Below are positions 27,794-33,111 of a DNA stretch of 64,000 nucleotides, one piece after another; position 1 is the stretch's first letter; each line of letters starts with the position of its first letter. The position numbers and the translations under genes are program-made. This stretch comes from Adineta vaga. Taxonomy: Eukaryota > Animalia > Rotifera. The notes under the pieces were generated by a model that did not search any database, had not been told where the DNA came from, and saw nothing but the letters and a program-made list of their open reading frames with translations. Location of the stretch: NCBI GenBank assembly GCA_021613535.1, contig CP075495.1:10912001-10976000 (forward strand), given 5' to 3'.

Positions 27794-29492
27794 TTATTCA
27801 AATGCTGGAAATCGAGCATGAATAGGATTAAGTACATCAGTCAAGAAATAAATTGTACCAGCAAGACCTTAAAAAAGATTGATTTAAAGATGCTACCTAT
27901 CATTCATGATAAATAAGTACAAACCTTCAAATAATGAATAAGGATGATCAGGTGTTCGTGATAATTCGTGTTTACCATAATCCATACAATGTTCAGCAAA
28001 CTATACAAAATCAGTTTAACATGGATAAATTTCGTTTAGATAAAAACAAGACTAACTTTAATAGCACGATGTAACCATTTACTATCCTTTGTTGTACGAT
28101 ACAAATCAAGAAAGACATATCCATTACCAGCTGTACCATGACAAAGACTATAACTTTTTCTTAACAATCCTCTTTCCCATACAATTTCACCAGCTGACGT
28201 AGCAAGATCTAAATAGGTTTGATTTTTTGTTACCTAAAATAAATGTTTAGTACATCTTCATATCGTTTCGAAATGAATTCGTGTGCCTACTTCATAGGCA
28301 CGAACAAATAGATAGATAAAACCAGGTGCACCATGACACCATTGTACAAGTTTATCTGCTTGACTACCACTCGATGATAGATAATTACCGCTAGGTAATC
28401 GTTTTGTTTTAAGAAATTCAACAGTTGGTATCAGATGTGAATCAACATATGATCGAAGACAGGAAAACGAATCATGATGTGTTACCTACAAAAGTATTTG
28501 ATTGATTTATTTTCCTATTGAAAAATCTCTTTCAAACCTTGAGTAATAAGTAAATAATCCCCGATACACCATGTGCTGCTCCTAAATATTCACTTTCATG
28601 CCATTGATACATGAGTGGTGATTTTGAACCAGATTCTTTCGCATATTTTTCACCGGACTTAATGATCGACTCAAATACCTAAAGGTACAAAATCAATCCT
28701 TTTCAAAATGAAAAAATAATCATTTCATCATTACATCAATCACTAATTGTTTATCAATTACATCACTTCCAATTTCTTTCCGAATAAACATTAATGCATA
28801 AAGATAACCAGCACGTCCATAAAGGTATTCATCTGGCTTTGAATTACTTAATGCATCATCTTTTATTGAGACAATTCTGACAAAATAAAACAAATAAAAA
28901 TATGAAAGACATATGTTAACATCAATTTTCTTACTTATCAATACATTTCTTTACCATTTTTTCATCGCCTAAATCATTATAAATCACTGCTGCAATAGCC
29001 AACGGTCCAGGATCACCGGCCAAAAATGAAACTCTTTTACCTACGTCGAACAGAACTATAGAATTCATAAAAAAAAGATTGAATTCCTACCATGCAGTTG
29101 TTCTAATGATGAATCGATCAATGATTTTGCTTTCCATTTATAAACATCTTTTTGTGTCGGAAATAATATTGTAAGACGTAAATAAAGTAATGCAATACCT
29201 GTGATATCGAACAGTAAACTATTACTAATAACTATGAGATTGTGCTACCTGCACTTCCAGTATAAACTGATGCATCAGTTCGATCAGTTTGATTCACATG
29301 TCTTTCAAGTTTATTTGTTTGTTGTTCAATCCAATGAATAATCTTAGATTCAATTTCTGGTATTAACTAGAAGATGAAGAAACAGTAATACAATTGAATA
29401 TGAATAAAGACAAAACAAACTTGATTATTGGAAATAAGATAATGTTCACCTCGATAATCCAAATACTGATTTGGAAAGTAACGATCAGTCAT
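27794..29492 (-). CDS. LANCL2: LanC-like protein (LANCL1/2 type)
   Basis: SVYTGSAGIALLY, SFLAGDPGPLA, PDEYLYGRAGY, YLGAAHG, QWCHGAPG, SLCHGTAGNGY, TPDHPYSLFEGLAG, ARFPAFE*; ~10 exons; Zn ligands intact; orthology to LANCL2 versus LANCL1 not resolved. Confidence 0.92.
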
Positions 29493-29630
29493 GATCAATA
29501 TATTTCTAAAAAATAATCCTAAATGAGATTCTTTCTCGAAAGACAAAAACTATCACTGTGTTTAATGTTTACTAAACGAAATAACAAGTTTATCACAATA
29601 CATCAATAAAATATTTCATAGTTTGTTGAA

Positions 29631-31329
29631 TTATAAATCAGTTTTATCATGCTGAGAATCGATGGAATCTTCATCTTCTGTTGATTGTTGCTCATCATTA
29701 TTTTGAACAGATTTTGGAGTCGTTGTTTTTTGTTTTTTATTTATAATTTTAACCATTTCATAGAGAATATCAGTAATATGATGTTGATGCTTAAAAATGG
29801 AAAAACATTGGTGAATGTTGTTGTAAGCAAAAAGAAATTTTTTACCACGCCATTTATTTGTTCAACTTCTGTTTTTGTTACTTGTCCATTACCATCGACA
29901 TCAATAATACCATAGAACTACGAAAAACAAAACAAATCAAGATAGTTTTATAAGATCATATCCAACCTCTTCAAAAATAGCTGATGTTTCTGGATCGGAT
30001 GCCAAATCATAGGATAGATGCTAAAAAACATACAATCATTCACTAATCAACATAAATAATATTATACTTTAGAAAATGTTTCTTCCCATTTATTATAACC
30101 TTCAGAATTTGTATTAACAAGACTCATTATTACATCTCTAAAAGAACGAAGTGTAATTTTTAATCATTAAATGATAATCGAAATTTTTTACTTGAAACTT
30201 TGCGGTTGTCGATCAGCAGACCAATCAATTTGATCCAATGTAAATGTTGCATCATAATCGGAACATTGTTTCAATTCATTGGCATCGATTTTCAATGCAT
30301 GTTGATGTTTAATATTATAAATAACCGAGATTGTATGTTCCATTGAACGTTCTTGAAAGACCCAAGAATTTGGAATAAATAAACAATCACCAGATGTTAA
30401 ATTGGCTAAATGATATTCAACATTGTTAAATGCAGGAAAAAGATCAAAATCAACTCTAAAATGTTAGTTAATTTTGACAGAATTCATTTAATGAAAATAA
30501 CTATATTACCGATCTGGATTCACAGGTGGTCCATGTTGTTGCATCTTTTCTGGTATAACAATCTGAAGAATAAACTTATATCGAAAAGAACAAGAAAATC
30601 TTTTCTTTATTTACTTTACGAATATCAGGATATTTGATTGTATTAATTAATATCATACGTTTATTTCCACGAAGAATACAATGAAAATGATCATAATCTT
30701 GATTGAATAATAATGGTGATGCATTGATAGCATTGATAACTAGAATCTATATCGATTTCCTTTCTTCAACAAAATTCTAATGAGATAAAAGAAAATACAT
30801 ACTGCAGATGAAAATATTTCTAAAGCAGCTTCACATTGTAAAGGTTTAGGAACCACAAGATATTTTCTAGAAGAAACAAACATGAATTTATAATTGAATG
30901 AAAAAGTATTCTATTCGACAGTTACTGTAAAACTTGTGGTATATTATCAGCAAATATTAATGGCTCTTTTTTATATTGTTGAAGAAAATCTTCGAATGTC
31001 ATTGGAATTCGTTGTCGTTGTCGTGATTTAAATGATTCAACTTGAATATTCGTATCTGCTAATCCATAAACTTGATCGAGAAGTTGTTTATCTGTTTGCC
31101 AAACAGAAAAATGTTTATCATTATTCAAAACTTGACGAGAAAGACTTGGTTCTGATTTCGGTATGTAATAGGTAAACAATTTTGATATTGTTGGATATTC
31201 TTCATGAAGTTCTTTGATATGTATTAAATTTCCAACAGAACCTAATGGTTTTAAATGACCAGGATTTTGATTTGCACTGAAAATAAGATTGATATTTGAA
31301 ATGACCAGAATAAAAATTAGAGAATTCAT
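29631..31329 (-). CDS. Secretory-pathway JmjC (cupin_8) + EF-hand protein, predicted catalytically dead; C-terminal KTDL
   Basis: Signal peptide MNSLIFILVISNINLIFSA; GHLKPLGS; LFNQDYDHFHCILRGNK; GDCLFIPNSWVFQERS; EF loop DVDGNGQVTKTE; ends ...QHDKTDL*; ~9 exons in frame. Confidence 0.88.
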
Positions 31330-31387
31330 CTAAAAAACATTAGAAAAATGATTCATAGCACGCAGAAAAAGAAATATTTCATTCAAT

Positions 31388-33111
31388 TTATAAATCGTCA
31401 TGTTCAATCGTATTATCATCTTCAGTTTCATCACTGGATAATGATTCGTCAGTAGATTGATTTTCTTCATCTGATTTACCTTCGACAATATCCATAATAT
31501 CTTGTAGAATATCATAGATATCCATGATTTTCTACAATTGATCATATTAACACGAAAAATCTTTGAATAAATCTTTTATCCTTACCGTACTATTACCAAT
31601 AGCTAATTCTACTTCTTTCAGTGTGGCAAAACCATTGTTATTTGTATCAACTGTATTGAATAACTAAACTTTTACGATAAAAATATTATTTTGAAAAACA
31701 AATGTCTTACTTCAGCAAAAAGGTTAATTGTTCGAATATTTGAATGAAGATTAAAATTTAATTCCTAAACGAGAAAAAAATGAAGAAGAAAAACAAAAAA
31801 CATTTCGATGTATTACTTTTGAAAATTCTTTTGTCCATTCTTTAAAACTAATTGCATCACCATCAATAAGATCAAGCATAAAATTTTGTAAACGATCAAT
31901 ATCAGATAAATCTTTTGGCCATTTGATTGTTTCGAGTGTTATAAATTTTGATTTCTTTTGTAAAATACAAGTTTTGTCATTCACAATCGCATTCTTGACT
32001 CGCATTTGATTTAACCAATAATTAACAGCAATATTACGATTTGTTGAACGTACTTGATGAATCCATAGAGAAGGAAGATAGAGACAATCACCTTTACTTA
32101 AATTAATTTGATAATAGTGAATATCATGATCAAGTGAAGGATAATGTTCATAATCAACACTAAATAGAGAAAACAAATAGATAAAGTTATTGATTGAATG
32201 AAGTAATTTTACCGATCAACATCAATCGATGAAAATGAACCAGTGGGATTATCAATAATCTATATAGAGAATTTTAAAGAATATTTTTTCTATATAAAAT
32301 ACGATTGACGACAAACCTCTGCTGCCACTTCTTTGTGTATATGAGGATCAATAAGAATAAATTGTTTTTCACCTTGTAACACACAGTTAATATTATCATA
32401 ATCATCGGTATGTACAACTGATGATGTATTGCCTGAACTAGAAAATATTCAATACAAAAATTTATTTTCCTAGTTTTTCATTTGAGAAAAACTTACCTGT
32501 ACCAAAACATCTACAAATAGAACAGAAATCATTTTTTATAAAAGAAAAATAACATATAGAATTATTAATAAACTTACAGCAACTTGAAATGTATCGAATG
32601 CTGGTTTACATTGTAAGCATTTTGGTAGGACAAAATAAGATCTAAGAAAAACACAAGGAGTCTATGATTCATATTGAAAAATATTGAAATTGTACCTTAA
32701 TAAATTGGGAACTTCATCCACAAGATAAAGTTCTTCGTGTTGATATCGTTTTAAGAATTCTGTCATTGTCATACTAAGAATATTCTGTTTTCGACTTTCT
32801 TTTTTACGTGTTTCAGTATGAATAATATCTTTGTTCTTAGCAAAAATCTTCTTGATATTTTCATCTGAATTCCATAATGATAAATGTCGTTCATGATTTA
32901 ATACATGACGGAAAACTACAGGACGAGATTGAGAAACATATTTATCGAAAAATTCGATTGGCTCAGGAAATTCATTTGTTATTTGATCAATTTTTTCAAA
33001 AGGACCAGATGAACCAAATGGTTTCAAATGACCTGAATGGTCTGTTGACAATGATAATTGTATGAAACACTTGAGAAAATAGAAGTAAATCAATTGTCGT
33101 TGATAACACAT
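31388..33111 (-). CDS. Secretory-pathway JmjC (cupin_8) 2OG/Fe(II) oxygenase + EF-hand; C-terminal HDDL
   Basis: Signal-like N-terminus; GHLKPFGS; MFWYSSGNTSSVVHTDDYDNINCVLQGEK; GDCLYLPSLWIHQVRS; EF loop DTNNNGFATLKE; ends ...IEHDDL*; includes a 14-nt micro-exon at 32497-32510. Confidence 0.92.

What the first reader, a model, noticed from the sequence alone, without database searches (positions are those of the whole stretch)
29631..33111. Tandem ER-type JmjC/EF-hand pair: one intact 2OG/Fe(II) oxygenase plus one pseudoenzyme twin
Seen: both genes encode signal peptide, GHLKPxGS, JmjC core, a canonical EF-hand loop, an acidic tail and a KDEL-like end (HDDL, KTDL), and they share several intron positions. 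The upstream copy has the full iron triad (HTD at 32404-32412; WIHQ His at ~32057). In an ungapped alignment the downstream copy replaces all three ligands (HTD->FNQ at 30699-30707; WIHQ->WVFQ at ~30356). It keeps the Lys of GxK, the EF-hand and an uninterrupted ORF. Established: HxD/E...H binds Fe in JmjC enzymes; KDEL variants retrieve proteins to the ER; lumenal hydroxylases can work with non-catalytic homologous partners (P3H1/CRTAP). Inference: a Ca2+-responsive, ER-lumenal protein hydroxylase acting as an enzyme/pseudoenzyme heterodimer on an unknown secreted substrate. I know of no characterised system like this.
Basis: partly seen in the sequence, partly recalled or inferred. Interest (0 to 1): 0.88.

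Follow-up and report, generated by a model that had tools for sequence, protein, structure and literature searches.

The report
ER JmjC hydroxylase plus dead twin
Two neighbouring rotifer (Adineta vaga) genes encode a probable protein hydroxylase of the endoplasmic reticulum and a conserved, expressed copy that has lost its iron site; the wider animal family they belong to has never been studied.

Summary
Two tandem minus-strand genes of nine exons each (A 31388-33111, 426 aa; B 29631-31329, 423 aa; 32% identical) match the Adineta vaga proteins I4U23_009172 and I4U23_009171 exactly. Both have a hydrophobic N-terminus, GHLKPxGS, a Cupin_8/JmjC fold (nearest JMJD5, JMJD7, FIH, TYW5), four invariant cysteines, two shared N-glycosylation sequons, an EF-hand region, an acidic tail and a KDEL-like end. 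A keeps H174/D176/H255. B has F170/Q172/F251.

B is not a pseudogene. All its introns are spliced out in transcript contigs from three studies. dN/dS against A. ricciae is 0.09-0.21, against 0.08-0.17 for A. Fifteen B-type sequences from Adineta, Rotaria and Didymodactylos all lack an intact triad.

The tree places the A/B duplication after the one monogonont (Brachionus) copy sampled. A second B lineage has persisted without an adjacent A gene.

The parent family (signal peptide, JmjC, EF-hand, xDEL) occurs in placozoans, cnidarians, molluscs, a sea spider, amphioxus and Ciona. I found no paper on it.

The enzyme/pseudoenzyme heterodimer idea remains untested. The closest characterised analogues are JMJD8 and P4H-TM.

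The parts
31388..33111 (-). Gene A (A. vaga I4U23_009172), 9 exons, 426 aa. Exons: 33111-32696, 32641-32578, 32510-32497 (14-nt micro-exon), 32437-32317, 32259-32213, 32159-31817, 31764-31711, 31663-31586, 31531-31388.
   Evidence: The model is identical to P0184. All 8 introns are skipped in transcript contigs. Pfam Cupin_8 scores 129 bits.
29631..31329 (-). Gene B (A. vaga I4U23_009171), 9 exons, 423 aa, triad-less paralogue. Exons: 31329-30926, 30866-30803, 30746-30615, 30562-30510, 30455-30192, 30137-30068, 30020-29967, 29917-29846, 29789-29631.
   Evidence: The model is identical to P0201. All 8 introns are skipped in transcript contigs. Pfam Cupin_8 scores 53.5 bits.
32404..32412 (-). 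A: H174-T-D176, the first two Fe(II) ligands.
   Evidence: These positions are invariant in 84 of 102 family proteins.
32057..32059 (-). A: H255 (WIHQ), the distal Fe(II) ligand.
   Evidence: It aligns to the first His of WWHH in FIH; that this is FIH His279 is from memory. Coordinates.
30699..30707 (-). B: F170-N-Q172, replacing HxD.
30350..30358 (-). B: F251-Q-E253. Phe replaces the distal His, and Glu253 is newly fixed across the B clade.
   Evidence: F in 13/14 and E in 13/14 B-type sequences.
32365..32367 (-). A: K189, candidate 2OG C5-carboxylate Lys (GxK).
   Evidence: Nearly invariant in the family.
30660..30662 (-). B: K185, the same Lys, retained.
   Evidence: K in 13/14 B-type sequences.
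33043..33111 (-). A: hydrophobic N-terminus, putative signal peptide, followed by GHLKPFGS at 33010-33033.
   Evidence: An AF2 N-terminal helix is set apart from the domain. SignalP was not available.
31273..31329 (-). B: hydrophobic N-terminus, putative signal peptide, followed by GHLKPLGS at 31237-31260.
31613..31648 (-). A: EF-hand loop DTNNNGFATLKE (Ala at loop position 8).
   Evidence: Helix-loop-helix in the AF2 model.
29867..29902 (-). B: EF-hand loop DVDGNGQVTKTE, which fits the PROSITE EF-hand pattern.
   Evidence: Helix-loop-helix in the AF2 model.
31391..31402 (-). A: C-terminal HDDL, after the acidic tail at 31403-31486.
   Evidence: Other family members end in KDEL, RDEL, HDEL or HEEL.
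29634..29645 (-). B: C-terminal KTDL.
   Evidence: KTDL, KSDL or QSEL in all full-length B-type sequences. MANF's RTDL is a known KDEL-like signal (PMC4731063).
31330..31387 (-). 58-nt spacer between the stop codon of A and the ATG of B. It ends in TGTTTTTTAG immediately before the ATG.
   Evidence: A-transcript contigs end at about 31332, and one contig runs unbroken across the spacer.

Best explanation
Gene A encodes a catalytically competent member of an animal-wide, uncharacterised family of ER-retained JmjC-only Fe(II)/2-oxoglutarate protein hydroxylases. The family has a signal peptide, a GHLKPxG motif, a JMJD5/JMJD7/FIH-like Cupin_8 core with two probable disulfides, an EF-hand region, an acidic tail and an xDEL end. 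Gene B is a tandem duplicate. On the tree it arose after the one monogonont (Brachionus) copy sampled, which makes it probably bdelloid-specific.

B lost the iron ligands and several family-invariant positions around them, including Y129 (a likely 2OG-binding Tyr by analogy, not tested) and the KKExR motif. It kept the fold, the cysteines, the glycosylation sequons, the N-terminal motif, the EF-hand and the retrieval signal. B is therefore a true pseudoenzyme that works in the same compartment as A.

Shown here: the architecture, the residue losses, conservation, purifying selection, transcription and splicing, and the duplication history. Inferred: ER-lumenal location, hydroxylase activity of A, and Ca2+ binding.

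The mechanism I think most likely for B is a non-catalytic, Ca2+-loaded client- or partner-binding protein that modulates or complements A in trans. Of the sub-cases, I give about 0.45 to an independent client binder or regulator and about 0.25 to a physical A-B heterodimer.
For: The models equal the annotated A. vaga proteins. Cupin_8 scores 129 and 53 bits. The AF2 models have pLDDT 88 and 87, and Foldseek best hits are JMJD5, JMJD7, TYW5 and FIH (E 1e-13 to 1e-17, target TM about 0.8 for JMJD5). Of 102 full-length family proteins, 84 have HDH and only the bdelloid B clade lacks the triad. Four cysteines are invariant, and two sequons are shared by A and B. The B clade has 100% support, is sister to A, and Brachionus lies outside both. 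dN/dS for B is 0.21 (NG86) or 0.09 (ML), against 0.17 or 0.08 for A, and exon structure is identical in A. ricciae. All introns of both genes are removed in contigs from 4 runs in 3 studies. The order A, B, LANCL is conserved in 8 further loci. Several changed positions are fixed anew within B (F251, E253, T259, N265, P167, N161, A127), which points to a new constraint rather than decay.
Against: There is no experimental localisation, activity, Ca2+-binding or interaction data. SignalP was not available. HDDL and KTDL do not fit the strict KDEL pattern (recalled from memory). EF-hand Pfam scores are below threshold. Synonymous sites are near saturation (ML dS 1.4-1.6), so the omega values are rough. 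The runs used for expression are labelled RNA only by guess, although precise intron removal shows they are cDNA. Polymorphisms among runs are 8 nonsynonymous to 4 synonymous in B and 4 to 4 in A, which suggests some relaxation in B, but the numbers are too small to decide.
Confidence: 0.75

Rival explanations
1. A and B form an obligate enzyme/pseudoenzyme heterodimer in the ER lumen, in which B supplies substrate binding or stability, as with non-catalytic partners of collagen hydroxylases.
For: A and B are adjacent on the same strand, 58 nt apart, and one transcript contig bridges them. The pair is syntenic across bdelloid loci. The nearest structural relatives, JMJD7, FIH and TYW5, are dimers (PMC9001643), and JMJD8 oligomerises in the ER (PMC5684140). 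Both keep the N-terminal GHLKPxG motif and the C-terminal helices.
Against: The B2 lineage has been kept in Adineta and Rotaria at a locus with no A gene or A remnant. That gives two B lineages to one A lineage, and linkage is evidently not required.
Confidence: 0.25
2. B is a decaying or recently dead pseudogene, with no function of its own.
For: The three metal ligands and further family-invariant positions around them are lost. B has a long stem branch. It has slightly more nonsynonymous polymorphism than A.
Against: The ORF is intact and the exon structure identical in every species sampled. dN/dS is 0.09-0.21. It is spliced and expressed. The clade predates the split of Adineta, Rotaria and Didymodactylos.
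Confidence: 0.02
3. B has a remodelled pocket that binds a different ligand or metal, or carries out different chemistry. Glu is common at position 172 (10/14) and a new Glu253 is fixed. On this view B is a neo-functionalised protein rather than an inert binder.
For: Newly fixed polar and acidic residues line the former active site (E253, T259, N265, N161), and K185 is kept. The basal Didymodactylos copy still has HxE with Tyr in place of the distal His, which suggests stepwise remodelling.
Against: Position 170 varies among hydrophobic residues and Ser (F, I, L, M, V, S), which is not what a ligand site looks like. No known JmjC protein works without the facial triad (my own knowledge).
Confidence: 0.08
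4. The proteins are not ER residents. They are secreted or act in another compartment, and the C-terminal tetrapeptides are non-functional.
For: HDDL and KTDL depart from the canonical [KRHQSA]-[DENQ]-E-L pattern (from memory). No localisation data exist.
Against: Of the 18 aligned family proteins, 17 end in -EL or -DL tetrapeptides, including KDEL, RDEL, HDEL, KEEL and HEEL. KTDL is almost invariant in the B clade. RTDL works as a retrieval signal in MANF (PMC4731063). Acidic tails are typical of ER residents (my own knowledge).
Confidence: 0.1

Closest known systems
JMJD5 / JMJD7 / FIH / TYW5 (JmjC-only hydroxylases, Pfam Cupin_8)
   Same: They share the fold and active-site layout. They are the best Foldseek hits and the best PDB sequence hits, FIH and JMJD7. 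A has the HxD...H triad and the 2OG Lys. JMJD7, FIH and TYW5 are dimers (PMC9001643).
   Different: Those enzymes are cytosolic or nuclear and have no signal peptide (my own knowledge). A and B add a signal peptide, the GHLKPxG motif, four conserved cysteines, an EF-hand region, an acidic tail and an xDEL end. Identity is only 14-21%. The database names 'JMJD7-like', 'JMJD5-like', 'KDM8' and 'TYW5-like' are automatic labels, not orthology.
JMJD8
   Same: It is the only characterised JmjC protein of the ER lumen. It has a signal peptide, forms dimers or oligomers, and is suspected to be non-catalytic because its triad is altered (PMC5684140).
   Different: JMJD8 has HxH...H, and that paper reports no EF-hand or KDEL end (neither term occurs). 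A has a normal HxD...H. Orthology to JMJD8 was not tested because no JMJD8 sequence was at hand.
P4H-TM (transmembrane prolyl 4-hydroxylase)
   Same: It is an ER-lumenal Fe(II)/2OG oxygenase with an EF domain whose Ca2+ affinity lies in the ER range (PMC7948501).
   Different: It has a P4H-type rather than JmjC-type double-stranded beta-helix. Its EF domain is inserted within the catalytic domain rather than C-terminal. It is membrane-anchored rather than KDEL-retrieved, and no pseudoenzyme twin is known.
P3H1/CRTAP and collagen P4H alpha2-beta2 (non-catalytic partners of lumenal hydroxylases)
   Same: The concept is the same: an ER hydroxylase working with a non-catalytic, KDEL-bearing partner. 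This rests on my own knowledge and on a remark in PMC9001643 about PDI as the beta subunit.
   Different: Those partners are not dead copies of the catalytic domain. No interaction has been shown for A and B.

Membership tests
JmjC / Cupin_8 Fe(II)/2OG oxygenases | Double-stranded beta-helix JmjC fold | tested here: met
   Pfam Cupin_8 scores 129 bits for A and 53.5 bits for B. AF2 pLDDT is 88 and 87. Foldseek finds JMJD5 and JMJD7 at E 1e-13 to 1e-17.
JmjC / Cupin_8 Fe(II)/2OG oxygenases | HxD/E...H facial triad | tested here: met
   This row is for gene A: H174, D176 and H255. Gene B has its own row.
JmjC / Cupin_8 Fe(II)/2OG oxygenases (gene B as an active enzyme) | HxD/E...H facial triad | tested here: not met
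   B has F170, Q172 and F251. All 15 B-type sequences lack an intact triad.
JmjC / Cupin_8 Fe(II)/2OG oxygenases | Fe(II)/2OG-dependent turnover | not testable with these tools
   This needs recombinant protein.
Pseudoenzyme (conserved inactive paralogue) | Catalytic residues lost, but fold, ORF, expression and purifying selection retained | tested here: met
JMJD8 family | Sequence orthology to JMJD8 and its HxH...H variant triad | not tested
   No JMJD8 sequence or model was available in the tools. A has HxD rather than the HxH described in PMC5684140.
EF-hand Ca2+-binding proteins | Canonical 12-residue loop flanked by helices, usually paired | tested here: inconclusive
   B's loop fits the PROSITE EF-hand pattern, and A's fails at position 8. 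Pfam scores are 14-17 bits against a cut-off of 25. The AF2 models show two helix-loop-helix units, and in A the first has a degenerate loop. Ca2+ binding was not tested.
KDEL-retrieved soluble ER residents | Cleavable signal peptide plus a C-terminal KDEL-type tetrapeptide | tested here: inconclusive
   Both have a hydrophobic N-terminus. HDDL and KTDL are variants, and the wider family ends in xDEL or xEEL. RTDL is a precedent (PMC4731063). SignalP and localisation data were not available.
Enzyme/pseudoenzyme heterodimer (P3H1/CRTAP-like) | Physical complex of the two proteins | not testable with these tools
   Only single-chain structure prediction was offered.

The most novel reading that the evidence does not exclude
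The animal-wide family of signal peptide, JmjC, EF-hand and xDEL defines an undescribed, Ca2+-tuned protein-hydroxylation pathway in the ER lumen. In bdelloid rotifers it has become a multi-component system, in which one active hydroxylase works with two lineages of dead paralogues (B1, B2) that serve as regulatory or substrate-presenting subunits.
Probability: 0.2. Interest if true: 0.8.

Novelty: new variant of a known kind. Interest (0 to 1): 0.55.

Why it matters
According to PMC5684140, JMJD8 was the first JmjC protein found in the ER lumen, and that paper suspects it is not catalytic. Here there is a separate family with an intact triad, an EF-hand region and an ER-retrieval end. It occurs from placozoans to Ciona and amphioxus, I found no paper on it, and its database names are misleading. 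If it is active, it adds a new class of hydroxylation in the secretory pathway, with unknown substrates. The bdelloid pair also offers a natural experiment: an old, selected, expressed dead copy beside the live one, with an intermediate state in Didymodactylos. It could show what a JmjC scaffold does once the iron site is gone.

Tried and rejected
All later work used coordinates only.

Searches went exon by exon, by reference, until the database returned proteins identical to the models (P0184, P0201). These were then used by id. Exons were joined only inside local scripts, for translation, alignment and dN/dS.

3. Aligning all of B's exons as separate rows to P0052 misplaced exons 1 and 9 (A3). 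These rows were dropped (A4).

4. PDB sequence search with exon 1 gave only chance hits.

5. Literature searches for JmjC + KDEL + EF-hand and for JmjC + pseudoenzyme found nothing.

6. My first EF-hand regular expression was faulty and was replaced.

7. B versus B2 dN/dS is unreliable because synonymous sites are saturated.

8. The polymorphism counts are too small to decide anything.

9. Model coordinates are not exposed, so Cys-Cys distances and the geometry of B's pocket could not be measured.

10. The pseudogene reading was rejected. JMJD7 or JMJD5 orthology was rejected on architecture and on 14-21% identity.

Full report
**What is there**

The window is AT-rich eukaryotic DNA of about 30% GC. 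From the minus-strand sequence I built two gene models from coordinates only.

- Gene A spans 33111-31388, has nine exons and encodes 426 aa.
- Gene B spans 31329-29631, has nine exons and encodes 423 aa.

All introns are GT-AG and 47-67 nt long. Neither gene has an internal stop. The A model is identical to P0184 (Adineta vaga I4U23_009172) and the B model to P0201 (I4U23_009171), both on a 16.27-Mb contig. The window is therefore A. vaga, and the official annotation agrees with my models.

A and B are 31.6% identical over 408 aligned positions. They share seven of eight intron positions. A has one extra intron that creates a 14-nt micro-exon (32510-32497). B has one extra intron at 30138-30191.

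| Feature | Gene A | Gene B |
|---|---|---|
| N-terminal motif | GHLKPFGS | GHLKPLGS |
| First two ligand positions | HTD, 32404-32412 | FNQ, 30699-30707 |
| Distal ligand position | His of WIHQ, 32057-32059 | Phe of WVFQ, 30356-30358 |
| Lys of GxK | K189 | K185 |
| EF loop | DTNNNGFATLKE | DVDGNGQVTKTE |
| C-terminal end | HDDL | KTDL |

The distal His of A aligns with the first His of WWHH in FIH; that this is FIH His279 is from memory.

One correction is needed. B passes it, as do 12 of 13 full-length B-type and 8 of 11 A-type orthologues. Pfam EF-hand scores are below threshold for both.

**Fold and nearest relatives**

- Pfam Cupin_8 scores 129 bits for A and 53.5 bits for B.
- AlphaFold2 with a 56-57-sequence alignment gives pLDDT 88.4 for A and 86.8 for B. 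Each model has a JmjC core followed by two helix-loop-helix units and a disordered tail.
- Foldseek against the PDB ranks JMJD7, JMJD5, TYW5 and FIH first. For A, E is about 1e-16 to 1e-17, target TM is 0.8 for JMJD5, and identity is about 20%. For B, E is about 1e-13 and identity 14-16%.

Both proteins therefore belong structurally to the JmjC-only hydroxylases, not to the histone demethylases.

**The parent family**

A profile of exon 1 from both genes was searched against 1.84 billion representative proteins. It found 310 hits, many of them full-length proteins of 385-500 aa. These share the whole architecture:

- a hydrophobic N-terminus;
- PGHLKPxG and KKExR motifs;
- the HxD...H triad;
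- four invariant cysteines;
- an F..xDxNxDG EF-like loop;
- a C-terminal tetrapeptide ending in -EL or -DL, including KDEL, RDEL, HDEL, KEEL and HEEL.

Named members come from Trichoplax, a jellyfish (Sanderia), molluscs (Haliotis, Babylonia, Octopus), a sea spider (Pycnogonum), Branchiostoma, Ciona and Brachionus. Atlas clusters are mostly cnidarian, molluscan and chordate.

Source names are generic or borrowed: 'JMJD7-like', 'JMJD5-like', 'lysine-specific demethylase 8', 'TYW5-like', 'uncharacterized'. A full-text search for JmjC + KDEL + EF-hand returned no paper. As far as these tools can tell, the family is widespread in animals and uncharacterised.

**Evidence for the secretory pathway (inferred, not shown)**

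- Both proteins have a hydrophobic N-terminus.
- Four cysteines are invariant in all 102 family proteins, B included.
- A and B share two N-glycosylation sequons at the same positions in bdelloids: N168/N164 and N240/N236.
- The family ends in xDEL.
- KTDL is nearly invariant in the B clade and resembles MANF's functional RTDL signal (PMC4731063).

SignalP was not available.

**Gene B is a conserved pseudoenzyme**

- *Orthologues.* B-type proteins exist in A. ricciae, A. steineri, Rotaria sordida, R. magnacalcarata, Rotaria sp. Silwood1 and Didymodactylos carnosus.
- *Triad.* Of 102 full-length family proteins, 84 carry HDH. The only complete sequences without it are the 15 B-type ones.
- *Pattern of change within B.*
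  - His1 is replaced by a variable residue, mostly hydrophobic (F, I, L, M, V, S).
  - Asp becomes E, Q or D.
  - The distal His becomes Phe in 13 of 14 sequences.
  - KKExR, Y129, W163, G167, N267 and W269 are lost.
  - F251, E253, T259, N265, P167, N161 and A127 are newly fixed.
  - The GHLKPxG motif, W80/D83, Y123, the four cysteines, G187/K189, GDC..P..W and the EF Asp are kept.
- *An intermediate state.* The basal Didymodactylos copy still has HxE but has Tyr at the distal His.
- *Tree.* In the tree the Brachionus protein lies outside a bdelloid A+B group (99% SH-aLRT) and the B clade has 100% support. B has a long stem, but its later branch lengths are only about 1.4 times those of A.
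- *Gene structure.* Exon lengths are identical between A. vaga and A. ricciae for both genes, apart from the last exon.
- *Selection.* dN/dS between these two species is 0.17 (NG86) or 0.08 (ML) for A and 0.21 or 0.09 for B. dS is about 0.7 by NG86 and 1.4-1.6 by ML, so the values are rough, but both lie far below 1.
- *Expression.* Contigs from four public runs in three studies skip exactly the eight introns of A and the eight of B, including A's micro-exon. Both genes are transcribed and spliced as modelled.

**Genomic context and history**

The order A, then B, then a LANCL gene, with FUT8 further on, recurs in every fetched locus that reaches far enough downstream. These are the metagenomic rotifer contigs L001, L004, L005, L006 and L008, and A. 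ricciae L011 and L012; L009 shows at least A followed by B.

B has two lineages. B1 is the window's copy. B2 is A. vaga I4U23_024953, on another chromosome. Both occur in Adineta and in Rotaria.

The B2 loci of A. vaga, A. ricciae and Rotaria sp. Silwood1 keep LANCL, RNase PH and FUT8 downstream. They have no A gene or A remnant upstream within the fetched flanks. Only one A lineage was recovered per species in these searches. I read the B2 locus as the homoeologous block with its A copy lost long ago; that reading is an inference.

**Mechanism**

*Shown:* A has every residue expected of an active JmjC hydroxylase. B cannot bind iron through the canonical triad, yet it is maintained by selection.

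*Inferred:*
- Both proteins reside in the ER lumen.
- A hydroxylates a protein side chain. Its nearest relatives hydroxylate Lys, Arg, Asn, Asp or His residues; this is from my own knowledge, with JMJD7 as a lysyl hydroxylase cited in PMC9001643.
- The EF-hand region binds Ca2+ at ER concentrations, as shown for P4H-TM (PMC7948501).

*B's role:* I think it most likely acts as a non-catalytic binding protein in trans with A.

- For a physical heterodimer: JMJD7, FIH and TYW5 are dimers (PMC9001643), JMJD8 oligomerises in the ER (PMC5684140), and A and B are tightly linked.
- Against an obligate heterodimer: the B2 lineage has persisted unlinked to any A, and there are two B lineages to one A lineage.

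No multimer prediction was available, so this question stays open.

**Comparison with known systems**

- *JMJD8* is an ER-lumenal JmjC protein, so a JmjC protein in the ER is not unprecedented. It has HxH...H, and no EF-hand or KDEL end is reported for it (PMC5684140).
- *P4H-TM* pairs an ER 2OG oxygenase with EF-hands, but on a different catalytic scaffold (PMC7948501).
- I did not find any description of a dead catalytic-domain paralogue kept beside a live JmjC hydroxylase in the secretory pathway.

**Verdict**

I class this as a new variant of a known kind, of moderate to good interest. The interest lies mainly in the fact that the parent family, present across many animal phyla, appears to be unstudied.

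Noticed in passing
window 31330-31387 and 29493-29630; L010, L011, L012: The arrangement looks operon-like. Only 58 nt separate A's stop from B's ATG, and 138 nt separate B's stop from the LANCL ATG (29492). B's ATG is directly preceded by a pyrimidine tract plus AG in A. vaga, in both A. ricciae copies and in B2. LANCL has a similar acceptor about 13-16 nt upstream in the window and both A. ricciae loci, and about 11 nt upstream at the B2 locus. A has none. One transcript contig crosses the A-B spacer, and another runs on 1395 nt beyond 29550, the low end of the laid stretch just below B's stop, towards LANCL. This fits SL trans-splicing of downstream cistrons, but no spliced-leader read was seen.
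   Followed up: partly
window about 27800-29492, minus strand: A LANCL (lanthionine synthetase C-like) gene lies immediately downstream of B. Its exon ORFs give weak LANC_like Pfam hits, and its orthologues sit downstream of B in all related loci. Its ATG at 29492 was inferred by eye.
   Followed up: partly
L010 (A. vaga CP075494.1, 9497259-9514943), L013, L014: A homoeologous block carries B2, LANCL, RNase PH and FUT8 but no A-type gene. An LRRK/ROCO-like kinase gene lies upstream in the two Adineta loci. In L013 the RNase PH and FUT8 genes are called as one fused 839-aa product, which is probably an annotation merge.
   Followed up: partly
P0052 (Didymodactylos carnosus, partial): The earliest-branching B-type protein keeps HxE and has Tyr in place of the distal His. 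This is an apparent intermediate in the loss of the iron site.
   Followed up: partly
window 31410, 31477 and 32445 (table 7): Several transcript contigs diverge from the window into 208-255 nt of unrelated sequence at these points inside gene A. They may come from a divergent allele or from chimeric contigs. Unexplained.
   Followed up: no
window 31113-31329 (B exon 1): Three of the four runs have no contig over about 31136-31257, while the fourth covers it with three differences. This probably reflects strain divergence or filtering rather than absence.
   Followed up: no
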